25,102 nucleotides of DNA from Salpingoeca rosetta (taxonomy: Eukaryota; Protista; Choanoflagellata): contig JAWQFM010000008.1 of assembly GCA_033442325.1 (NCBI GenBank), forward strand, positions 1,540,246 to 1,565,347, read 5' to 3'. Shown piece after piece: positions 1,743 through 24,954 of the stretch (positions are counted from its first letter, which is position 1; every line of letters starts with the position of its first letter). The position numbers were made by a program, and so were the translations under genes. The notes beneath the pieces are model-generated. The model had not been told where the DNA came from. It saw nothing but the letters and a program-made list of their open reading frames with translations, and ran no database searches.

Positions 1743-2295
1743 TGTTGAGAGTCAGTGAGTTTCTGTTTTGTGTTGAGTCCTTCCTACTTTGCCTTCTCAT
1801 GTGGTTTTGTCTTGTTTGCCAACAACACCTGCTTTGTGGTTTTTCCGTTTGCAAACATTCCTTCCTCTCTGCTGGCATGCATGTGTGCCAACTGCCTCTC
1901 CTCTCCTCCTTCCCCTACACACGTGAGTTGTGTGTCATGTGTGCCATGTGTGTGTGCATGCCCGTCATGCTTGGCAAATGACATGTGTGCGTGCCATGCA
2001 GTGTTGTGAAGTGTTGTCTGTTGTGTATGCTTGCCTGCAAGCATTCATGCTGCTTAGCATTGCTCTGCGCGCATGTATGCATGCTGTTCGTTGTTTAGAT
2101 TGTTTGTGTTCGTGCACACTCTGCCCATGTCGCCTTGGCAGCTCTGTTGACTGTGTGTGCACTTGTCTTGTGGTTGTTTGAGCATGCTGCCCGAGCTTAT
2201 TTGGCAGCAGCTTGCTGTATTTGTTCATTCTCCTTGTGTTCTTGTTTGTTGCGTTTGTCTACAGTACACACACACACACCTGTCGTGTTTCAACA
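1743..2295. repeat. Putative copia-type long terminal repeat (553 bp)
   Basis: Begins TGTTGAGA (1743) and ends TTTCAACA (2295), an inverted terminal match of 7/8 with the canonical TG...CA. It is non-coding, and its left end coincides exactly with the loss of integrase similarity. Orientation is not established. Confidence 0.75.
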
Positions 2296-3616: not shown

Positions 3617-5773
3617 AGAGATGTAATCAGATATGCAAAGCAATGCAGTGATGGCAAGGTGTTATCAACCGTTAGAGTGTACTTCATCACATGTGCCTCG
3701 AGTTCACCATACAAGTCAGCGTGTACATATGTGCACCCACACCCACACTCACACACGCGCGAGGGCAGATGTCCCCCTTCTCACCCTCAGTGGCAGTTCA
3801 GACGTACCTGGCTCCACAGCGAGCATGGAAGCGAACAGGGTGTCCATGTCATCGGGGTACGCGGAGGGCAGCCGCTGGATCTGTCAAAGACAGATGATGA
3901 CACACACATGCAAGGACACATGTGAGTTGCGCGCGAGGGAGTCATCGGTAGGTGCCAGCACTGTGCCGAACACCGTGTTGAATTGATGGGCGTGTATGCG
4001 TACCTGCCCCTTTGAAACTTTGAAGGCTAATGCGTTGTAGTCCTTTGCATTGAAGGCCTTCTTCAAGGTTGCGACTTCGTACATGACGCACCCAAACGAC
4101 CACACGTCCGACTTGATGTTGTACGGCTGCAAAATCATGGCAGCAACAGAGCCCACGCACGGTCAGCACAGAGAGGTGGGAGGGGGGAAGAAGCACAAGA
4201 AAGAACACAAAAGGATGAGAACAGCCCCTTGCACCGCATGCGTGTGACAAACACGTACCACGCGTGCGTAGAGCTCGGGTGACATGTAATATGGAGTGCC
4301 TGTCACCTGAAAAACAGGCGCAGCCCCCAGGCAAGAACAAGAACAACAAGGTTAGGGAGAGGGATGAGCATGGTGGAAGAGCGTGTCAAAGTGAAGGCAG
4401 GGGCAGAGCACACACAACACAGGCACATACAGACACACTGACAGCCACAGCCACGGCCACAGCAGCAGCAGGCATGTCACCACGAGGTCACGTATTGGCA
4501 CTCACTGTTGTGGCCATGTCATCTTCTGAATCCAGGACACGGGCGATGCCCAGGTCACCGACCTGAAAGGAGACGCACAGCAGCAATCGCAGCATCATCA
4601 TGTGAACGGCGACACAAACGCAAACAAACAGAACCTTGTGCATCGATACAGGGTGCACATGTACGGATGCACACACGAACGCACACATGTTAAAATGCGC
4701 ACACACGCACTTGCAAACATATACTTGCAAACATATACTTGCAAACACACGCACGCACACATGCTCAAACACACACACACACACACACTGCAAACACACC
4801 AACGGACTGGGTACCTTGACAACTTGTTTCTTTGTGAGGAAGATGTTCTGCGTTTTGAGGTCTCTGTGCATGATATTCTTGTCGTGGAGGTATTGCAAGG
4901 CCAGTCCAATTTGCACAAACCAGTCCATGATTTGGGTTTCGGGCAGCAGGTGACCGGTAGCGGCTTGTTGCCTGAGCCTGTGTGTTGAGAACGGACAGGA
5001 TGGAAGCGGTGATCAAGGAAGAAGCAAGGCATGTGAGTTGCGGTGCAAAATACGGAAGGACACATAAGGCGGAACATGATCAGGCATCGCGTCACAAGCC
5101 AACATGTATGCATGTCTGCACTCATGGCTGCAAAACAGGGTCAGCACACGCACGCACATGTGCACACACAGACAGACAGGCAGACAGCAAAGGGGCACAG
5201 ACAGACAGGCAGACAGACAGCAAAAGAGCAGACAGACACAGAAAGACACGCACGCACACACACACATACACACGCGCGGCGCACGCACGCACGCACACAC
5301 ACGCACACACACGCATGCACGCACGCACACACACGCATGCACGCACGCACACACGCACACACACACACACACACATTCATGAGACAGTGAACCGCACCGC
5401 GTGTAAAGATCTCCGCCCTCGCAGTACTGCATTACAATGTACAAGAACGCATTGTCTTTGCTGATGAAGGATTCGCGGTGCGATACAATGTTTGGGTGAT
5501 TGAGTGTGGAGAGCAGCTTTGCCTCCTGGAATGCGTTCCTTTGCTCCTTGGTTGTCGCTCGCTCAAGGGCAATCCTCTTGACAACATACTGCATGTGGCG
5601 TGCATGTGCATGCGTGTGGTTCGAAGAGGGTGCGCGGTTCGGAGACATGAGAAATGGCAACAAGCGGACACGGCACACAGATACTTACTGCGCAGAGACA
5701 CACGGGCACACGTACAAACAAACACAGACAGACAGACAGACAGACACACGCACACACACACATACACAGACAC

Positions 5774-6155: not shown

Positions 6156-8357
<2,202 letters not shown>

Positions 8358-8822
8358 TGCACACACGCACATGTTCGCGCAGTACATGCAGCCGCGGTGG
8401 GCGTTGTGTTGAGTTGCGTGCCTGCACGCTCACATTGCAAGTTTACGCTCCCGTGTGGCGAGGTGTTGCCTCACCCTCGCAGGACCTCTTCCGTCCTTGT
8501 GCGTTGGCTGTGTTGTGCTGTGCTGTGTTGTGTTGTGTTGTGTTGTGTTGTGAGGTGGTTCAGCTGCCAGCACGTCCTACACCTCATGTTCTCGCCAGAG
8601 TTGTGACTTCTTTTTCGCTTCTGCCGTGTTGCTTGTTTAGTGTGATGGCTGATGTAAACGCAACGCTTGATCCAGCCTCCCCCCGCCCCCGACATGAAGA
8701 CACTCATGACACGTCGACGACAGCGGGTAAACACGTAGAGAGGCAACGGATAACGAGCCATTCACAGAGACAGACACAGAGAACAGCAGAGGGAATGACA
8801 CACATTGACAGCAAGGTTGAAA

Positions 8823-8888: not shown

Positions 8889-10503
8889 AGGCGCTGTGGG
8901 TGGTGATGAACTTGAGAATGGCGTGGTTCAGCGCTTCTCCTTGATCAACTTGCACCCAATGCCCGCAGGGGAAAGCTTGCACCTGGAAAAAAGACAGGTG
9001 GGGTTCGGGATCCCGTGAACCACCAGACTCTATGAGGGAGAACAATGGAACAGCTCTTCGCTCTTTTACGACAAGGTAGCAAGCAGCACATGCACATGCA
9101 CAAACACACACTTGGCAGTCCTCGCGGCGATCCATCTCCTTGAGCCATCCGTCCGAGTGGAACATGAAGGGCTGCGTCATCATGGCACGTGCATGTACAT
9201 TGTCAGATGATCACAGTGAGGCGCAATCCCATTCAGAACACAAAACATGCGTGGAGACACACAGACACAGACACAGACACACACAGACACAGACACAGAC
9301 AGACACAGACACACAGACACACAGACACACCGACACACACACACACACACAACCATGTACGCACCTTGGCGGCGCCGTAGGAGTAGAAGGTTGGACGCTG
9401 AGGTGAGTAGTGCTTGAGGTAGTTTGTACCTCCACTCCCACCAAGGAAGAGGCCTTTGTAAAAGTAGAAGTATGGCTGGTCGACGGATGATAAACACAAG
9501 CAAATGCGCAAGGCGGTGTTGCGACAGGTGAGCACCGCGGCGGGTTTGCGAGACATCATGCAAGCTGCAATGGCACATGTGCGTGTGGGACATACATAGT
9601 TGACGTGGGAGCCATGGTCCGCAGAGAAGGACGGCGAGTGCGCAAAGTACTTGGCGCACAGTCGTGTCATCAGGTCCCCGATCGGCTTGCCAACTACAGG
9701 CACCACGTTCCCGAGAACAAAGGCAGATGACAGCCAAAGCTGGTACGCCGGAACCAGCACCTTCCCCGCGACGGATGCGATGTGGATGCGGCCACCAACA
9801 TCGATCGTGGACAGCGTCTTGACCAGCTCGGGTGCTTTGCGCTCAATCATGTACGCAAATACAGCACCCCAGTCGTGCGCAACCACATGCACAGGCTTCC
9901 CGTCGTTCACCTCCTTGATCTGCCGAATAAGCACATCTCGCACGTCCGGAAAGTCCAAGGCCCATTTGTGAGACGAGTCGTACCCACTGTAACTGGGCAG
10001 GGAAAGGCACGCACAATGGTACTTGTGCTTCGTGAAGAAGTCGACCTGCAAGCGAGAGGTTGAAGGAGGGACAGGGACGGGGAGTGTCAGGGAGACAAAG
10101 TGTGTATCAAAAGGGCGGGGGGGGGGCGGAGGTGATCAGCCAAACGTCTGGACATTGGACATGGCAGTGCAAAGGATAAGCTTGCAGCAAAACAACAACA
10201 CCCACGCACAGACAAGGATGGTCGAATAGACACGTAGGCAGACAGCCCGACCGACAGACACACAGGCACATCACTCAGAGACATCATGTAGGGACACACA
10301 AATACACATGAAAACAAACAGAATACAAATGTACATACGCACAACCTCGTACATACACGGTGACAGACCTGGTTCTTCCAGAGAGCGTTCGTGTCTGGCC
10401 ACCCGTGCAGGAACACGATGACGCCTTTGCAGGACTTGTCCTTTCGCGCTGGGCCAGCCCGCAGCACCTCCACAACCACATCAGCCGCCGCACTGCCACT
10501 CAT
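8887..10503 (-). CDS. Alpha/beta-fold hydrolase of the epoxide hydrolase/haloalkane dehalogenase-like group; 5 exons (10503-10369, 10045-9596, 9475-9365, 9171-9112, 8982-8887)
   Basis: Motifs: oxyanion-hole VFLHGWPD, Asp-nucleophile elbow VAHDWGA, and a C-terminal catalytic His in CGHWVQ. All introns are phase-0 GT-AG, and the start has an AAG-ATG context. Confidence 0.88.
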
Positions 10504-11533
10504 CTTCACTTGTCGTTGTCGATCTCGGCTCGGTCAAAGGCAAAATTGTCATTGATACGACTCTCATAGGCAGTTTGGCCTTTGCTTGGTTTGGCGCGCC
10601 ACTCCTCTTGCTTTTGTTTTTGTTTGAAATGATGATGCACCCAAACAAATAAGCGAAGCGTGCACCGCATGACATGCGGTGGTGATGCGACCGACCCCCC
10701 AACACTCACCTCGGCGTCATTGGAATGATGATGGTGGAACAGCATGAGAAGCACGCGATGATGACAGCAGCAGCGATACGAGCAACTGCAGCAAAAGCCA
10801 CGGACACAGGGTGATGCTGTGCATTACAACGAAGAAGCGTTCATGCTGCTGCTGTTGCTGTTGCTGCTGCTGCTGCTTTCCTCATGAGGTGCGGCACCGA
10901 CCTCTTTCATCCGTGCCACAGCGAATCCGCACCGGCTCCCACACAACACAGCCAGGCAAGCCGCAACCCAAGCAACTTGAGCAGTGGACACACATGAACA
11001 TGGCGGAGCGCTTCTTCGCATCAGCCATCAAGAAATGGGTGTGAGTGGACCCATGCCCCACCCAACCACGCTGCTTCCGACATTCGTCATCGTTTCCTCG
11101 CAACAACAACAACAACAGCAGCAGGTGAGACACATTGGTCGCTGTCGTGCTGTTATTGCTGGTGTGTGTGTGTGTGTGTATTTCACCCACACCTTTCTTC
11201 TTCTTTCTTCTTCCATCCTCTTCCTCCTCTTCCTCTGCTGTTTTGTTGTGCTGGTGGTTGCGTCTTTTCGGTTCTGTTTGTTGGTGCGTGTGTTTGTTGA
11301 TGTGTGTGCGTGTGTGTGTGTGTTTGGGTGGTTGGGGAATGACAAACGTGTTTGTTGATGTCATCGCACGCTGCACGGCCAGCTGCATTTGTTTCATCCA
11401 CGCACGTGGTTCCCTTTGCGGCTCCCTTTGCGGCGGTGGCACACGGTTGCTCATACTTTTCTTTTTACCCTTCCTCTCTTCCTCTCCTACTCTTCCTTCC
11501 CTCTCTTCAGTGGATGTGCTCTTTGCACGCCCA

Positions 11534-11620
11534 CCCCCCTCTCTCTCTCACATACACACGCACTGACTCACACACACCCCCCCCTCTCTCTCACATACAC
11601 ACGCACTGACTCACACACAC
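11534..11620. repeat. Tandem duplication of a ~43-bp unit
   Basis: ccc..ctctctctcacatacacacgcactgactcacacacac occurs twice back to back. Confidence 0.85.
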
Positions 11621-11897
11621 ATTTCGTGATGAAGGACTGATGGTGCTTGGCTGAGGGAGCGTTGGCGCCAAACCCGCGTCCACCAACTTTCTCTTCTTCT
11701 CTTCCTCTATCGCGCGGCAAAGCAAGCTCTCTGTGCCTGCCTGCGTGGCTTGCTTTTGGTTGGGTTGACTGTGCCACCGACTGCACTATCCATTTCTTGG
11801 CCAGTGTGTTGTTTCTTTGATGTTGGCACGCGGGCAACCAGCTCTTCGCTTCCCCTCTCCGTGTCTCTCTGTCTTTGTCTCTCCCGCACCTGGCGCC

Positions 11898-11931
<34 letters not shown>

Positions 11932-12870
11932 GCAGTTGTTGCACCACTGTTGGCGCGCTGCTACTGCTGCTGTTGCCAGCGTTGCCATTGTTGCTGCGGG
12001 CGCCAGCGCTTCTCTCTCCATCTCTCTCTCTCCTCTTGTCTTGTGCGGTCTATTCCAAGCACACTCTCTTGCGTGTGCGCATGTGCATGAGCGCGCGCTC
12101 CTGCGCATTGAAGGAGACAGCAACCAGTTTCTTCCTTAGCGCCTCTCTGTGGCAGCTACCACGACTCTTCCCCCTGCCTCGTCTGTTCTCAACAGCCTCC
12201 TCTTCTTCCTCCTTCTCCCTTCATCTTCACGGTCCTTTCAAGCACTCACCCTCGTACTGTCTTCCTCTCACCTTCCCAGCACGCTCTTGCGTGCTGTCAC
12301 ACGCACGCACACACGAACACGGACACCTTTGTCGCGCTGCGGCCTGTGCGCTGCGCCCCTTGCTTGGGGGGTCGCTGCCTTTCGCGCCAGTGTTGGCAGT
12401 TTTCCGCCTGTGGCCACGGGGGCATATCCACCACGCCTGCTGTGCATCGGCGGCGCTGTGCGCTGTGTGCGTTGCGTGCGTCCTCGGCACCTTTCCCACT
12501 TTTCTTGCATTGGCAACGAATTTCACTTCCCGCGCAAACTTTGAGCTGCGCACAAACACACACACACACACACAGAGCATTTGCCTTGCTTGTTGTGCAC
12601 TTCATTGTTCAATTCTTCTTCTCTTCCTCCCTTCCTCCTTTTTTTCATACGTGCATGTATGCATGGCTCAGCGCCATCCTTCCTGTTCATTTTCATCTGG
12701 GCCACTGATATCGGGTCGGTTGCTTGAGTGCACCCGTGCTATCCTCTCTCTCTGTGCACCTGTGGTGCCTGTGTACGTCCCACGCACGCCTCTTCTTCTC
12801 CGTGTCTGGTGGTGTCCATCACTCACCCTGCTTCTCCTCCACCCTTCTTCTCCTCCACCCATCCCCCCAG

Positions 12871-12930
12871 CCCCCTAAGCTTCCGTCTCCTTCCATCCCC
12901 CCTCCCATCCCCCCCTAAGCTTCCGTCTCC
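12871..12930. repeat. 20-bp direct repeat in a C-rich tract upstream of the JmjC gene
   Basis: ccccctaagcttccgtctcc at 12871 and 12911. Confidence 0.85.
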
Positions 12931-13007
12931 GCCACCCATCCGCTCTCCTCCTCCACCACCAGTCTTCTCTCTCCCTTCTCTTCATCCCCTGCGCGCTATC
13001 CTGCACC

Positions 13008-15320
13008 ATGCCTCGGACTGCATCGTCAGTGGTGTGGAAGGACGCGTGCCTGACGACCAACCGCGTTGGGCCCGGTGTTTTGCCCACGCCAACGGTCGAT
13101 AGCCCACCGCTTCTCCGCTACCCGGGCTTCACCACCAAGTACCCGCTGCCGGCATTCTCAAAGGGCCGCCTGGCCCGCCTCTCGACACCGCTAAGCATCC
13201 AAGTGCAGACCGGCTACAGCGGCTGGAGGCTCAAGGCAGAGAGGAACAACGGCAGCAGCAAGACAATGCTCTTGCCTGCCTACCTGCAGATGGCTGCTCG
13301 CAACGACCCAAGCCCAACAATGGCACAGGGTGAGCACCAGCCCAAGAGGGCCAAGTCCATGTCACCAACGCCGCTCGCCCTCAGCAACAGCCGCGGGTCC
13401 AGCACCTGGTCCAGCCCCAGCTCCAGCTCCGATTGCCAAGCACACGACACGCCGCCCCGCCCCACACAAGCACGCGAGGACGTTGTGCGCGCCGCGTACA
13501 TGGAGGCAGATGCGGCAGCGGTCCGAGCACTGAGGGTGCTGAAGACTGGGGCCAAGATTGAGTTTGCCGGCAACATCGACCTGTGCCAGGCCGTGTTCAC
13601 TGAGCAGTTGCAGAAGCTGAGCGACGCCCTCCCCGACGAGCTGCACTGGCGCGGCGGCAGCACCATGCTGGCAGAGCTCGACCCCATCGAGGGCATCAAC
13701 AGCCCGCAGATGTACCTCAAGATGACCGGGTGCACGACGCCTGCACACCAGGAGAACGACAACCTGCTGTCCATCAACATCAACGTCGGGCCGGGGTCGT
13801 GCGTGTGGTACGGCGTTGCTCCGCAGCACGTGGGCCGCGTCAAGTTGCTCTGCAAGACGAAGGGCATCGACTTCAAGGACGGCGGGTGGTGGCCAACACC
13901 TGGCGAGCTCGACAAGGAGAACATTCCGCTGGTGCGGTTCATCCAAGGGCCGGGCGAGGCTGTTCTCGTCAACCCAGGCACCCTTCACTGGGTTCGGGTG
14001 AGTTTCTCTCCTGCCTTGATTGTGTGTGCATGCATGCACGCATTGAGATGATAGATGGATAGATAGTGTGTGTATCTGTGTGTCACACACACACTGTTTG
14101 TGCGTGTGTATGTGTATGTGCATGTTTGTGTGTGTGCATGTGCATGTTTGTGTGTGTGCATGTGTGTGTGACTCTCTGCGAGTGCACTGTGTTTGATACT
14201 TGCTCGCAGCGATTCAACCACTCACCCATATTTTGGCACACGCATGTTGTTTGTTTGTCTTCATGCTCCACCCCTCTTTCTTTACCCCCCCCCCCCCACC
14301 TCTTCAAAATCTTGGTTGTTGGCGTCAGGCGCTGAGTGCATGCGTGCATGTGTCGTGGAACCTTGCGCCGGCCTGCGCGCTGCAGTATGTGTCGATGTTT
14401 GGTGCGACGTACCACATCGTTCCGCGCCGCCACCTTGCGCGCTGTGTCTTGTTGCGGGAGCAGAAGCGCCTGCCGCGTGACGCTGCCCTGTGCGCGGCCA
14501 TGCTGCGCGTGGTGACGCAGGACCTGGAGGAGCACAGGGCCGTCTGCGCAGACAAGACGCTGGTCGCTGTGGCATGCGAGCCGAGCAACGCGGCGTGCTT
14601 TGTGTGCGGTGGCGACGTGGGCAACGCCTTCTTCACCTCGTCCCCTTCTAAGGTGTTCTGCGTCAAGTGCCGCAACACCATTGTCGCCCGTGTCCGCACC
14701 GCCGCCAGGAGGCTCCGTAAGGACGTGTACACGCCCTTCATCCGGAAGCACTGCCAGTACCTGCAGGCCGAGAACGACCTGCCCATGTACATGTTCAAGG
14801 TGTACAACTTTGTGTTGAGCGTGGAGGAGCAAGAGGCCATGATTGCGGCGACGCGGCAGCACCTGCTGCGGCTGCGCAGCGGCGACGGGGTGGCGACCTT
14901 CACGCTTGGCGCGCCAGGCAATGACGACAACCGCAGCAGCAACAGTGGCAGCGGGGTTGAGACACTTGCTGACAGTGGTGCTGACGCTGATGATGCCGCT
15001 GGAAAGATGATGGGCACTCCCGCCACAGCTGTTGGTGGTGATGATGGCACAGCTGTTGGTGGTGATGATGGCACAGTTGTTGGTGGTGATGATGGCACCA
15101 CCCCTGCGTGCAGGATGCGAGTGGATGGTGCTGTTGTGACGGCGGTCTCAACTGGCGACACTGCCTCTCCCACTGGCGTGGTGATTCACAGCAGCATCGG
15201 CTGTGCCTGCGCTGACGATAACGACGATACCGGCGATGATGACAAGGAAGAGGAACAGGATGAGGAGAAGGAGCAGAAAGGGAAGGAGGGAGGGAAGGAA
15301 AAAGAGAAGGCGGAGAAGGT

Positions 15321-15395
<75 letters not shown>

Positions 15396-15480
15396 GATTG
15401 GGAGCGAGCACATGGGCGTTGTTCGGGCATGGCTGGCTGCTGTTGGGGAAGAAGACAGAATTGCAGAGTGGAAGCCATGA
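13008..15480 (+). CDS. KDM6 (UTX/JMJD3)-type JmjC histone demethylase-like protein, 713 aa; exons 13008-13997 and 14329-15480
   Basis: FAGNIDL...GINSPQMYLKMTGCTTPAHQENDNLLSININVGPGSCVWY...GGWWP...IPLVRFIQGPGEAVLVNPGTLHWVR|ALSACVHVSWNLAP parallels UTX FGTNIDL...[34 protein letters not shown]...GSWWP...[35 protein letters not shown]. It is followed by IVPRRHL and a CxxC...CxxC zinc-binding domain (CFVC...FCVKC). The single intron is phase-0 GT-AG. Confidence 0.9.
15025..15096 (+). repeat. 3 x 24-bp coding minisatellite (TAVGGDDG)
   Basis: acag(c/t)tgttggtggtgatgatggc three times. Confidence 0.9.
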
Positions 15481-16160
15481 GCGTGTCACACCAGTGCTTG
15501 CTTGGCCCCAAGGCGCTGCGAGTGAGTTGTTGGTGTTGTGATGACACACGCTGTTGTGTTGATGGCGTTGAAGCATAGCCGACATTTGTCGGACATTGTT
15601 GGATGGGTTTGATGCGTTGGGTCATGAAGGGTGCTTGCTGGTTTGGTGCGGCCCATGTGCCTGCTCCCTTTGCTTATTCAGCAAGCACCCTCTCCTCTCT
15701 TTTGTTCTTGTGCATTTATATTTGCAATTGTGCATGTGCGTGCTCCTGTGCGCTTGCATGCGTTTCATTTCATTTCCTCACTTGTGTACACAACCTGCCC
15801 ACCTGTGCCTTCTTTCCTTGTGCCATTGTTGTGCTTTGTTCTGTGTTGTGATTGACTGGGTGTTCCTTTCACAACGATGTGTGCGCTTGTGTTGCGCTGC
15901 TGGTTGTTTGCTTGATCAGCTTTTAATCTATGATTTCTGCAAGTGGTGGTAGAGTGGTGGTAGAGTGGTGGTGGTGGCGGCGCTTTGTTGTTGGGGTGGT
16001 GTCAGGCCGTCGTGCCACGTGCTGTATGTACGTAATGCACTGCTTTGTGCGTGGCAACTGACATGGATTCTCTCTGGTTCCCTTTTTGCTCCCTCTCCGT
16101 CAAAGCAATAAACGACACCTCCACACCCCAAACTGCAGAGACGTGCGTGTGTGTGTGTGT
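15119..16160 (+). repeat. Copy 1 of a ~1.05-kb near-identical direct duplication (JmjC gene tail + 3' UTR, AATAAA at 16107)
   Basis: Matches 19047-~20130. ORFs 15596/19565, 15603/19572 and 15631/19600 are identical. Ends in a (GT)n tract. Confidence 0.95.
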
Positions 16161-16164
16161 TGTG

Positions 16165-16200
<36 letters not shown>

Positions 16201-16502: not shown

Positions 16503-17078
16503 TTAGAGGTTGCGCTTGATCCACTCCTGAAGGCAGAAGATGAGATCGCCGCGGTGCTTGGAGTTGAGCTTGGACACGTTCTGCTGAAGCCAGTCTCCAA
16601 ACACATCAGGGTCCTCGCCCATCACAAGGAATTGGCCCTGTTTACGGTGTGTGCGTTTGTGTACAAAGACGGACAGTGTGTGTGTGTGTTTGTGCACACA
16701 AAGACAGATAATGAGTGGGTACGTGCGTGTGCTCATAGACGGATAGTGTGTATGTGTGTGGAGGAAAGGGCGGCGTCAAGAAGGTGGATGAAGGACAAGC
16801 AGGTGATATCATGCGAAACCGCGCAGGTCAGAGAGTCAGAAGGATCTCAACACACCCTTGTCAATACAACATCCAGCCAACCAAGTCAACCAAGTCAACC
16901 AAGTCAACAGAACAACTCACAACAAACTCACCAGCACTTGCTTGGCCGTGGCGAAACCAAGCGCAGCAAGCTGCTCGCCACCCTTCTCGCCAATGCCGGC
17001 AAGTTCTGTGGCCGCCTTGTCCTCCATGCGCTCGCGCACGAACTCGTCGTGCTTCTTCGATGTCGTGCGCTCAGCCAT
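16503..17078 (-). CDS. BANF1: Barrier-to-autointegration factor homolog, 93 aa; exons 17078-16932 and 16637-16503
   Basis: MAERTTSKKHDEFVRERMEDKAATELAGIGEKGGEQLAALGFATAKQVL|GQFLVMGEDPDVFGDWLQQNVSKLNSKHRGDLIFCLQEWIKRNL aligns end to end with human BAF (TTSQKHRDFVAEPMGEK...LAGIGE...GF.KAYVVLGQFLV...F.EWL...CL.EW). Confidence 0.92.
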
Positions 17079-17128
17079 TCTCGTTGTTCTCGTTGTTGTT
17101 GTGGTTGGTTGTTGTTGTCGTGGTGCTG

Positions 17129-17518
17129 TCAGCAAAGTCGTGGGTCGGCTGCTGGCTGGTGTTTGAGGATTTTTGGTTTTGGTGGTTCGTCGGCTGTCGC
17201 TTGCAGGGTAACCGTTACTACTATTTTTGGTGTCGGATTTTGGAACTGCAAAACGTGACAGACTCGAGAATGCAGCAGCTTTGATTTCCAGCACGCTGCT
17301 GCAACCGGAACTGCAAATGCTTGTGTGCTGTGGCGGTGTGTAAACTCGGCTTTCACGTCAACGTCGTCGTTGTCTTGGGGAGATCGCGTCACGGCGAGAG
17401 TGCGAAGCAAGCGGTCAGCACCGGTAGTCAACACAGGCCTTTGGGTAAGCCTTGCAGTAGCTGCAGTGGCAACACCAGCAAACCACCGTGTGCAGCCAAT
17501 CATCAAGATCGACGACAT
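17129..17518 (-). CDS. Hypothetical 129-aa ORF with a mitochondrial-presequence-like N-terminus
   Basis: AAG-ATG context as in the neighbouring genes. The first ~45 aa are Arg/Thr/Ala-rich and nearly free of acidic residues. No recognisable domain. Confidence 0.25.
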   Translation of the reverse strand: MSSILMIGCTRWFAGVATAATARLTQRPVLTTGADRLLRTLAVTRSPQDNDDVDVKAEFTHRHSTQAFAVPVAAACWKSKLLHSRVCHVLQFQNPTPKIVVTVTLQATADEPPKPKILKHQPAADPRLC

Positions 17519-18946: not shown

Positions 18947-19046
18947 NNNNNNNNNNNNNNNNNNNNNNNNNNNNNNNNNNNNNNNNNNNNNNNNNNNNNN
19001 NNNNNNNNNNNNNNNNNNNNNNNNNNNNNNNNNNNNNNNNNNNNNN
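18947..19046. other. Assembly gap (exactly 100 N)
   Basis: N run. A length of 100 is commonly a placeholder for an unknown or negative gap size. Confidence 0.98.
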
Positions 19047-20130
<1,084 letters not shown>

Positions 20131-20144
20131 GTGCAGAGACGTGC

Positions 20145-20237
<93 letters not shown>

Positions 20238-20245
20238 CGCGCGCG

Positions 20246-24954
<4,709 letters not shown>

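What the first reader, a model, noticed from the sequence alone, without database searches (positions are those of the whole stretch)
13008..15480. Minimal, TPR-less KDM6-type H3K27 demethylase in an apparently non-animal genome
Seen: the Fe(II) triad HQE...H, the 2-oxoglutarate ligands (YLK Lys, TPAH Thr, SININ Asn) and the KDM6-specific C-terminal zinc-binding domain are all retained. The protein starts right at the pre-JmjC region, with no TPRs or long disordered N-terminus. It has one intron in 2.5 kb, whereas the NEK4 and MetRS genes have an intron every ~100-200 coding bp. Established: KDM6 enzymes erase H3K27me2/3 and are best known from animals, and H3K27me3 silences transposons in many unicellular eukaryotes. 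Inference: a stripped-down, intron-poor and possibly multicopy KDM6 could be a lineage-specific expansion or an anti-silencing cargo of a mobile element rather than the housekeeping UTX ortholog.
Basis: partly seen in the sequence, partly recalled or inferred. Interest (0 to 1): 0.75.

Follow-up and report, generated by a model that had tools for sequence, protein, structure and literature searches.

The report
Choanoflagellate KDM6 histone demethylase gene
This is the one catalytically intact copy of a three-member KDM6 (H3K27 demethylase-type) gene family in the choanoflagellate Salpingoeca rosetta, an ordinary inherited gene and not transposon cargo, and the likely eraser of this organism's Polycomb mark.

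Summary
Window 13008-15480 (+) carries a two-exon gene (13008-13997 and 14329-15480, one phase-0 GT-AG intron) for a 713-aa protein with a KDM6-type JmjC domain. It matches PDB KDM6B at E 3e-33, against 2e-3 for KDM4. All Fe(II) and 2-oxoglutarate residues and a CxxC...CxxC motif are present.

The genome is Salpingoeca rosetta. It holds exactly three KDM6-type loci:
- the window copy (A);
- PTSG_03365 (B), 90 kb away;
- PTSG_02170 (C), on another contig.

All three share a roughly 4.3-kb unit that includes 2.4 kb upstream of the ATG. Only A keeps the canonical active site. B reads RQE with its 2-oxoglutarate Lys and Thr replaced. C has lost three 2-oxoglutarate ligands.

No TIR, LTR, transposase or reverse transcriptase flanks any copy. 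No TPR exon lies upstream. Choanoeca flexa and a metagenomic relative are also short and TPR-less, and the relative shares the intron position.

So "lineage-specific expansion" is supported. "Mobile-element cargo" and "not the housekeeping ortholog" are not: A is the best candidate for the real enzyme.

KDM6 in choanoflagellates was tabulated in 2010 (PMC2938197). The scan had already noted copies B and C on other DNA. Exons were searched separately and the joined protein was never used. Interest is modest.

The parts
10540..13007 (+). Upstream block duplicated together with the gene in all three paralogs. It is a presumed promoter and 5' UTR region. Features: a sharp common 5' edge, the GC-palindromes TTTGGCGCGCCAC (10590-10602) and TTGGCGCCAAA (11662-11672), a conserved short ORF (11000-11041), GT donors at 11039 and 11125, and an acceptor at 11510.
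   Evidence: blastn and MAFFT of the three loci. A is 91% identical to B and 70% to C. There is no Pfam hit in its ORFs. An in-frame stop lies at 12876-12878, 43 codons before the ATG. The function of this block is not tested.
13008..13997 (+). Exon 1, 330 codons. It encodes the N-terminal part of the KDM6 jumonji fold (structured about residues 30-100), a disordered linker (105-145) and the JmjC barrel up to the second Fe-binding His (K238, T244, H247, E249, N257, H327).
   Evidence: ORF and sequence. Pfam JmjC at 7.8e-21. PDB KDM6B at 3.2e-33. AlphaFold model with mean pLDDT 74, aligned to KDM6B 1174-1473 at Z 24.6.
13998..14328 (+). The only intron: 331 nt, GT...AG, phase 0, rich in TG/CA repeats. 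Its position directly after HWVR is conserved in paralogs B and C and in a metagenomic ortholog.
   Evidence: Sequence. The annotated products of B and C join HWVR to ALSAC and VLGQC respectively. Contig L024 shows HWVR|GTCAGT...TGCAG|TCC.
14329..15480 (+). Exon 2, 383 codons plus stop. It encodes the last barrel strands, the helical domain, the CxxC-x17-CxxC zinc motif (14596-14670) and a final helix (to about 14890). A copy-specific low-complexity acidic tail follows, with GGDDGT repeats and a run of about 25 Asp from (GAT)n around 15323-15394. The last residues resemble the C-terminus of B.
   Evidence: Sequence and ORF. Alignment with paralogs and vertebrate KDM6. The model of paralog B, identical in protein here (dN 0), aligns to JMJD3 through residue 1638. 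No Pfam or PDB sequence hit.

Best explanation
The window carries the canonical KDM6-family gene of the choanoflagellate Salpingoeca rosetta.

**What it encodes.** The product is 713 aa and consists of little more than the KDM6 catalytic module: a jumonji barrel, a helical domain and a C2C2 zinc domain, followed by an acidic low-complexity tail.

**How it most likely works (inferred).**
- It binds Fe(II) through H247, E249 and H327.
- It binds 2-oxoglutarate through K238, T244 and the Ser and Asn of SININ.
- It uses the helical and zinc domains to position the H3 tail.
- It oxidatively removes methyl groups from H3K27me3/me2, the PRC2 mark. That mark is known to sit on cell-type-specific genes and LTR retrotransposons in this species.

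**Origin.** The gene was inherited vertically. It groups with other choanoflagellate and protist KDM6 sequences outside the animal clade, and it shares an intron position with a relative.

**Family history.**
- In the S. rosetta lineage a roughly 4.3-kb unit (2.4 kb of upstream DNA plus the catalytic core) was duplicated twice.
- Gene conversion later homogenised copies A and B, except for an N-terminal patch and the active-site patch.
- The two paralogs keep the fold but have altered catalytic centres, so they are probably non-catalytic.
- Copy A is therefore the candidate eraser.
For: **Shown**
- Gene model and residues.
- KDM6 is the best family by sequence: 3e-33 against 2e-3 for KDM4.
- The nearest named homologues are all animal KDM6A, KDM6B or UTY, plus the Choanoeca flexa protein.
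- KDM6 is also the best family by fold. The exon-1 model scores Z 24.6 to KDM6B, with KDM4 next at 18.9. The paralog-B model scores Z 27.5 over JMJD3 1183-1638, with KDM5 next at 19.9.
- The species is S. rosetta, from the names of the paralogs.
- The genome has only three KDM6-type loci, and A is the best match to the C. flexa query.
- A, B and C form one clade (aLRT 91) with branch lengths 0.13, 0.28 and 1.23. That clade sits in a non-animal group split from 114 mostly unnamed rows (aLRT 85); every one of those rows that I looked up by name is animal.
- The flanks are shared and have a common 5' edge.
- A and B are 98-100% identical except at 13128-13614 and 13675-13794. In the active-site patch pS is 0.29, against 0.00-0.04 in the N-terminal (aa 1-45) and post-barrel (aa 263-330) stretches and 0.11 in the stretch just upstream (aa 186-222).
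- Between A and C, pN/pS is about 0.9 in the active-site patch and about 0.3 in the rest of the barrel.
- The intron position is conserved in contig L024.
- H3K27me3 and PRC2 are present and cell-type linked in S. rosetta (PMC12572184).

**Inferred**
- The substrate (H3K27me2/3), enzymatic activity and a role in cell-type switching.
Against: - No activity or expression data are available.
- I could not retrieve an annotated product for the window copy. Transcription and the exact 5' end are therefore unverified.
- Pfam's KDM6 C-terminal models do not hit exon 2.
- The zinc-domain fold evidence comes from paralog B. AlphaFold was fed an alignment of KDM6 homologues, which biases the model toward that fold.
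- dN/dS among the paralogs is high for an essential enzyme, at 0.5-0.7 in the JmjC region. Pairwise values cannot say which lineage is relaxed.
- The tree is a quick search on 157 residues with long branches. The careful search did not finish.
- The full-length joined protein was never searched or folded.
Confidence: 0.75

Rival explanations
1. The 4.3-kb unit is, or rides in, a mobile element, and the KDM6 gene is anti-silencing cargo that counteracts H3K27me3 on the element.
For: - There are three dispersed copies with different neighbours.
- All three pairs share a common, sharp 5' edge within about 20 nt.
- H3K27me3 marks LTR retrotransposons in this species (PMC12572184).
- Earlier scan notes report copia elements about 15 kb upstream of the window.
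Against: - There are no terminal inverted repeats or LTRs around the unit. Only microsatellite matches were found.
- No transposase, reverse transcriptase or integrase lies next to any copy. The neighbours are an alpha/beta hydrolase, EHD and BAF at A, a TPR protein at B, and PP2C, a mitochondrial carrier and PPR/PRORP at C.
- No target-site duplication is visible at the 5' edge, and the 3' edge is diffuse.
- Only three copies exist.
- The intron is retained and is older than the duplications.
- The common 5' edge is expected if gene conversion acts within an old duplication.
- An earlier follow-up on copy C reached the same negative result (s1-440355).
Confidence: 0.05
2. The real protein is longer. 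Upstream exons, possibly encoding TPRs as in UTX, are spliced onto the 13008 exon, so 'minimal' is an artefact of reading the DNA alone.
For: - The 2.4-kb upstream block is conserved in all copies.
- It contains a conserved ATG-initiated short ORF with GT donors (11000-11041, 11125) and good acceptors (11510, 12963).
- A TPR-rich ORF lies next to copy B.
Against: - An in-frame stop lies 43 codons before the ATG.
- The upstream ORFs are low-complexity with no Pfam hit.
- The next gene upstream of A is on the opposite strand, with its ATG at 10505.
- The annotated products of B and C both start at MPRTASS.
- The TPR ORF near B is on the opposite strand and is TPR_10/12 type.
- The C. flexa transcript ORF has no TPR hit.
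- The exon-1 model already begins at the N-terminal boundary of the KDM6 catalytic fold.
Confidence: 0.05
3. The protein is a KDM6-fold oxygenase with a different substrate or no catalytic role, for example another histone lysine, a non-histone protein, or a scaffold like the catalysis-independent roles of UTX.
For: - The helical and zinc region is too diverged for Pfam or phmmer, and this region helps select the H3 tail in UTX (my knowledge of the UTX-H3 structure, 3AVR).
- The N-terminal jumonji extension is shortened relative to animal KDM6.
- dN/dS among the paralogs is elevated.
Against: - Every Fe(II) and 2-oxoglutarate residue is canonical in A.
- A has the shortest branch in the tree.
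- The fold match covers the whole KDM6 catalytic fragment.
- The organism has the substrate mark and no other KDM6-type gene.
Confidence: 0.15

Closest known systems
Animal KDM6B/JMJD3 (catalytic fragment structures 2XUE, 4ASK, 4EZH)
   Same: - It is the best sequence match, at E 3e-33 and about 45% identity over the JmjC region.
- It is also the best fold match.
- It has the same K...T..HxE...S.N...H active-site pattern.
- Both have the helical plus C2C2 zinc domain after the barrel.
- Neither has TPRs.
   Different: - The window protein has 713 aa, against about 1,680 for human KDM6B (length from my own knowledge). The fish KDM6B-like proteins named here are 1,753-1,766 aa.
- It lacks the long disordered N-terminus.
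- The jumonji N-extension is shorter.
- The zinc motif spacing is CxxC-x17-CxxC. In the vertebrate sequences aligned here the spacing is about 23.
- It has an acidic low-complexity tail.
Animal KDM6A/UTX and UTY (3AVR, 3ZLI)
   Same: It has the same catalytic module. The exon-1 model aligns to UTX 928-1229 at Z 24.1.
   Different: UTX and UTY carry N-terminal TPRs. None is encoded here.
Choanoflagellate KDM6 proteins: Choanoeca flexa EP00730_P005846 (596 aa) and the metagenomic ortholog on contig L024
   Same: - They are short, TPR-less proteins limited to the catalytic core with a canonical active site.
- L024 shares the phase-0 intron after HWVR and the motif GCTTPAHQEN.
- They group with the S. 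rosetta clade outside the animals.
   Different: - Identity is only 36-42%.
- The C. flexa protein still hits Pfam KDM6_GATAL (4.8e-7), whereas the S. rosetta proteins do not.
Paralogs PTSG_03365 (B) and PTSG_02170 (C) of S. rosetta
   Same: - They share the same two-exon structure, start codon and intron position.
- They share the 2.4-kb upstream block.
- B is identical in protein to A over the helical and zinc region.
   Different: - B has K to H, T to M, H to R and S to A in the active site, plus a replaced N-terminal segment.
- C has K to E, E to D, S to Q and N to H.
- The C-terminal tails differ.
- Degenerate KDM6 copies have a precedent: the Paramecium expansion with 'some inactive' members (PMC2938197).

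Membership tests
KDM6 (JMJD3/UTX) family of JmjC demethylases | A JmjC domain closer to KDM6 than to any other JmjC family | tested here: met
   - PDB phmmer gives KDM6B 3.2e-33, KDM6A 4e-30 and UTY 2.4e-29, against KDM4C 1.8e-3.
- The top named hits of the 1.84-billion-protein HMMER search are KDM6A, KDM6B or UTY.
- Fold Z is 24.6 for KDM6 against 18.9 for KDM4.
KDM6 (JMJD3/UTX) family of JmjC demethylases | The HxE...H Fe(II) triad and the family-specific strand-1 lysine with the other 2-oxoglutarate ligands (family description in Iyer et al. 2010, PMC2938197) | tested here: met
   - K238, T244, H247, E249, the S/N of SININ and H327 align with the vertebrate residues.
- K238, T244, H247, E249, N257 and H327 fall in columns at least 90% conserved in a 53-sequence alignment; the Ser of SININ was not among the columns listed at that level.
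KDM6 (JMJD3/UTX) family of JmjC demethylases | A C-terminal helical domain plus C2C2 (GATA-like, treble-clef) zinc domain | tested here: met
   - The four Cys are in the expected place.
- The model of paralog B, identical in protein to A here, aligns to JMJD3 up to residue 1638. It covers 373 aligned residues at Z 27.5, against 245 residues at Z 20.2 for the JmjC-only structure 2XXZ.
- Caveat: Pfam PF21326 and PF21322 and phmmer give no hit, and the model used a KDM6 alignment.
KDM6 (JMJD3/UTX) family of JmjC demethylases | H3K27me3/me2 demethylase activity | not testable with these tools
   This needs an enzyme assay. Only the presence of the mark in the organism is documented (PMC12572184).
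UTX/UTY (KDM6A) subtype | N-terminal tetratricopeptide repeats fused to the catalytic module | tested here: not met
   - There is no TPR hit in exon 1 or in the upstream ORFs.
- An in-frame stop lies before the ATG.
- The paralog annotations start at the same Met.
- The only nearby TPR ORF, next to copy B, is on the opposite strand.
Transposable element carrying a captured host gene | Terminal repeats (TIR or LTR), target-site duplication, and an element-encoded transposase, reverse transcriptase or integrase in or next to the unit | tested here: not met
   - Repeat scans find only microsatellites.
- The sequences at the 5' edge show no duplication.
- The neighbouring ORFs are ordinary cellular genes.

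The most novel reading that the evidence does not exclude
S. rosetta runs a one-eraser, two-decoy system. The window gene would be the sole active H3K27me3 demethylase. Its two paralogs would be selected pseudo-demethylases: the fold is under purifying selection, and the active-site patch is kept different despite gene conversion that homogenised almost everything else between A and B. [quoted passage not shown]
Probability: 0.25. Interest if true: 0.55.

Novelty: new member of a known kind. Interest (0 to 1): 0.3.

Why it matters
S. rosetta is the main experimental model for the pre-animal state, and H3K27me3 was recently shown there on cell-type-specific genes and LTR retrotransposons (PMC12572184). 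That paper names no eraser, with zero occurrences of demethylase, KDM6, UTX or JmjC. This locus pinpoints the single catalytically intact KDM6 gene among three paralogs. That gives a concrete knockout and assay target for testing whether removal of the Polycomb mark accompanies choanoflagellate cell differentiation. Beyond that the gene is an expected ortholog of a family already tabulated in choanoflagellates in 2010.

Tried and rejected
- **Pfam and PDB sequence searches of exon 2** gave no hit, even at permissive thresholds. BLASTP of exon 2 against a fish KDM6 gave only E 0.026.
- **Two word-index protein searches** found only the two paralogs and two fish fragments. No annotated product of the window copy appeared in the 262-1353 aa range, so I could not check its public gene model.
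- **The look-up of encoding contigs for B** returned nothing.
- **A genome scan with Pfam PF21326** was uninformative, because the control genomes gave no signal either.
- **The careful maximum-likelihood tree** did not finish in two 300-s runs. Only the quick tree is reported.
- **The idea that B's changes reflect pure positive selection** was rejected. Synonymous divergence is also raised in that patch (pS 0.29 against 0.00-0.04 in the more distant stretches on both sides, and 0.11 just upstream), which points to an old patch that escaped gene conversion.
- **Retrogene origin for the intron-poor structure** was rejected. The intron is shared with a distant ortholog, and the promoter region was co-duplicated.
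- **tRNA bracketing** was seen only at copy C, not at A or B.
- **Literature searches** for the locus tags and for UTX in Monosiga found nothing. No supplements were held for the chromatin paper.
Full report
**1. What is in the sequence**

The + strand holds two long open frames, at 13008-14051 and 14200-15480. Reading the DNA gives this gene model:
- Exon 1 is 13008-13997 and ends ...TLHWVR.
- A GTGAGT donor lies at 13998, followed by a TG/CA-rich intron.
- The acceptor ...GGCGTCAG ends at 14328.
- Exon 2 is 14329-15480 including the TGA stop. The intron is phase 0.

The product would be 330 + 383 = 713 residues. The joined protein was never built, searched or folded.

**2. Family**

Exon 1 evidence:
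- It hits Pfam JmjC at 7.8e-21.
- Among solved structures it matches KDM6B at 3.2e-33, KDM6A at 4e-30 and UTY at 2.4e-29. The next family, KDM4, reaches only 1.8e-3.
- A full HMMER scan of 1.84 billion representative proteins gave 560 hits.
- The nearest named hits are animal KDM6A, KDM6B or UTY and a Choanoeca flexa protein.

Active-site residues, from the alignments:
- K238, T244, H247, E249, the Ser and Asn of SININ, and H327 fall in the same columns as in vertebrate KDM6.
- This is the pattern Iyer et al. 2010 give for the family: a strand-1 lysine and HxE (PMC2938197).

Exon 2 evidence:
- It aligns collinearly with the KDM6 helical and zinc region and has CxxC-x17-CxxC.
- It is too diverged for Pfam KDM6_GATAL or KDM6_C-hel, and for phmmer against the PDB.

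Structure models fill that gap:
- The exon-1 model (mean pLDDT 74) aligns from its first residues to KDM6B 1174-1473 and UTX 928-1229, at Z 24.6, rmsd 2.6 A and 247 residues. KDM4 is next at 18.9.
- The model of paralog B is identical in protein to the window copy over exon-2 residues 1-128. Its pLDDT is about 90 for residues 220-500.
- That model aligns to JMJD3 1183-1638 at Z 27.5 with 373 residues. This is 128 residues and 7 Z units more than the JmjC-only structure 2XXZ, and it stands above KDM5 at 19.9.

The protein is therefore a KDM6 catalytic module and little else. The caveat is that AlphaFold was given KDM6 homologues as its alignment.

**3. Organism and copy number**

The paralogs are named in public databases as Salpingoeca rosetta PTSG_03365 and PTSG_02170. 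The 55-Mb assembly has three KDM6-type loci and no more, whether queried with exon 1, with exon 2 or with the C. flexa protein:
- A is the window copy.
- B is at C8:1463005-1465035 on the minus strand, about 90 kb away.
- C is at C3:113999-115783 on the minus strand.

A is the best match to the C. flexa query.

**4. Nature of the duplication**

- Homology among the loci runs from window ~10540-10580 to ~14712 (A to B) or ~14865 (A to C). It therefore includes 2.4 kb upstream of the ATG.
- All three pairs share the same 5' edge within about 20 nt. At that edge CAAAATTGCC occurs twice and is followed by TTTGGCGCGCCAC.
- In A the edge lies about 70 bp from the ATG (10505, minus strand) of an alpha/beta-hydrolase gene.
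- In B it faces a divergently oriented TPR_10/12 protein. In C it faces a tRNA-Glu.
- No inverted or long terminal repeats bound the unit.
- No element-type ORFs lie nearby, and the neighbours differ at each locus.
- The intron was copied too, and its position is older than the family. A metagenomic ortholog (contig L024) has HWVR|GT...AG|SLAPCVNISWNLAP.

This is ordinary segmental duplication. It is neither retroposition nor transposon capture.

**5. Mosaic history and active sites**

A and B are 98-100% identical nearly everywhere, including the upstream block, the intron and exon 2. There are two exceptions:
- 13128-13614 is unalignable, because B has a different N-terminal segment.
- 13675-13794 encodes the catalytic centre.

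In that second patch both synonymous and non-synonymous differences are raised. pS is 0.29 and pN 0.165, against pS 0.00-0.04 in the more distant stretches on either side and 0.11 in the stretch just upstream. The simplest reading is an old duplication later homogenised by gene conversion that spared the active-site patch.

The paralogs' active sites differ from A as follows:
- B reads ...MFIHLPGTSMTARQEN.... The 2-oxoglutarate Lys has become His, the Thr has become Met, the first Fe(II) His has become Arg, and the Ser has become Ala.
- C reads ...IRLEEAGWATPAHQDRDRLMQVHIN.... Lys has become Glu, Glu has become Asp, Ser has become Gln, and Asn has become His.

Between A and C, pN/pS is about 0.9 in this patch but about 0.3 in the rest of the barrel. 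So C keeps its scaffold under constraint while its catalytic centre drifts or adapts.

In the quick tree A, B and C form one clade (aLRT 91), with branch lengths 0.13, 0.28 and 1.23. A is therefore the conservative copy and the only one with a canonical centre.

**6. Is 'TPR-less' special?**

No.
- An in-frame stop precedes the ATG by 43 codons.
- The upstream ORFs are low-complexity with no Pfam hit.
- B and C are annotated from the same Met.
- The C. flexa transcript ORF (596 aa) has JmjC and KDM6_GATAL hits and no TPR hit.
- The family has been listed in choanoflagellates, fungi and ciliates since 2010.

In the tree the S. rosetta clade sits with C. flexa, a Mallomonas sequence and unnamed metagenomic proteins. 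A split with aLRT 85 separates this group from 114 mostly unnamed rows; every one of those rows that I looked up by name is animal. This fits vertical descent. The tree is a quick search on 157 residues with long branches, and the careful search did not finish.

**7. Likely function**

S. rosetta has PRC2-dependent H3K27me3 on genes that switch on in thecate cells and on LTR retrotransposons (PMC12572184). That paper names no demethylase.

The window gene is the only KDM6-type gene with an intact centre, so it is the natural candidate eraser. This is inference. No expression or activity data were available, and I could not retrieve a public gene model for this copy.

**8. Verdict**

- A lineage-specific expansion is supported.
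- Mobile-element cargo, and the idea that this is not the main ortholog, are not supported.

The scan had already noted the two paralogs on other DNA (s1-432576 for B, s1-440355 for C) and the duplicated 3' end in this window (s1-436659). My tests agree with all three.

This is a new member of a known kind and of modest interest. Its main value is as a defined target for Polycomb-erasure experiments in a choanoflagellate. The retained pseudo-enzyme paralogs are a small curiosity.

Noticed in passing
window 19047-20173 (and the gap at 18947-19046): The last ~1.1 kb of the KDM6 gene plus its downstream (GT)n (15119-16199) recurs at 94.9% identity with 48 gap columns. The repeat starts exactly at the edge of a 100-N gap and includes frameshifting single-base differences. 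It looks like a contig-end or scaffolding artefact and not a real partial duplication. A second gap lies at 21631-22137.
   Followed up: partly
L019:1680-4391 (+) = G000:C8:1468179-1470890: A 903-aa ORF packed with TPR_10/TPR_12 repeats lies head-to-head with paralog B, about 600 bp beyond the edge of the duplicated unit. It is on the opposite strand, so it is not an upstream exon of B.
   Followed up: partly
window 10540-13007: The co-duplicated upstream block has islands conserved in all three copies:
- two GC-palindromes resembling E2F sites, TTTGGCGCGCCAC (10590-10602) and TTGGCGCCAAA (11662-11672);
- a short ORF, MAERFFASAIKKW..., at 11000-11041;
- GT donors at 11039 and 11125, and a polypyrimidine-CAG acceptor at 11510.

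In the NCBI annotation a 128-aa low-complexity 'gene' is called in the equivalent block upstream of copy C. The block may be 5' UTR exons or a small co-duplicated transcript. This is untested.
   Followed up: partly
window 13675-13794 versus paralog B (L017): Gene conversion has made A and B 98-100% identical almost everywhere, but this 120-nt active-site patch keeps old divergence. pS is 0.29, against 0.00-0.04 in the more distant stretches on either side and 0.11 just upstream. This suggests selection to keep B's RQE variant distinct.
   Followed up: yes
window 1947-2294 and L019:5065-5417: A 354-nt stretch is shared at 92% identity between the region upstream of A and the region upstream of B. 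It lies outside the KDM6 unit and in opposite orientation. Its nature is unknown; it could be a repeat or a second small duplication.
   Followed up: no
window 5013-5678 (-), 6377-8412 (+), 9233-10505 (-), 16917-17294 (-), 22189-22959 (-): Neighbouring genes, identified by Pfam on ORF fragments:
- a protein kinase;
- an EH-domain (EHD) protein;
- an alpha/beta hydrolase;
- barrier-to-autointegration factor;
- methionyl-tRNA synthetase.

   Followed up: partly
L024 (ENA ERZ17174937, NODE_1090876, 1832 bp): A metagenomic contig carries a KDM6 ortholog 36% identical to exon 1. It has the motif GCTTPAHQEN and the same phase-0 intron after HWVR, and presumably comes from an unsampled relative of S. 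rosetta.
   Followed up: partly
L018 4092-4163 (-) and L020 818-889 (+): Two tRNA-Glu(CTC) genes in inverted orientation bracket paralog C. One lies about 50 bp beyond the unit's 5' edge. No tRNA genes were found in the window or in the 20 kb fetched around B.
   Followed up: partly
window 14899-15400; P0002 residues ~530-750: Each paralog has grown a different low-complexity tail after the catalytic core:
- A has three GGDDGT units and a run of about 25 Asp from (GAT)n.
- C has four tandem repeats of about 43 aa.
- B has a short basic tail.
   Followed up: no
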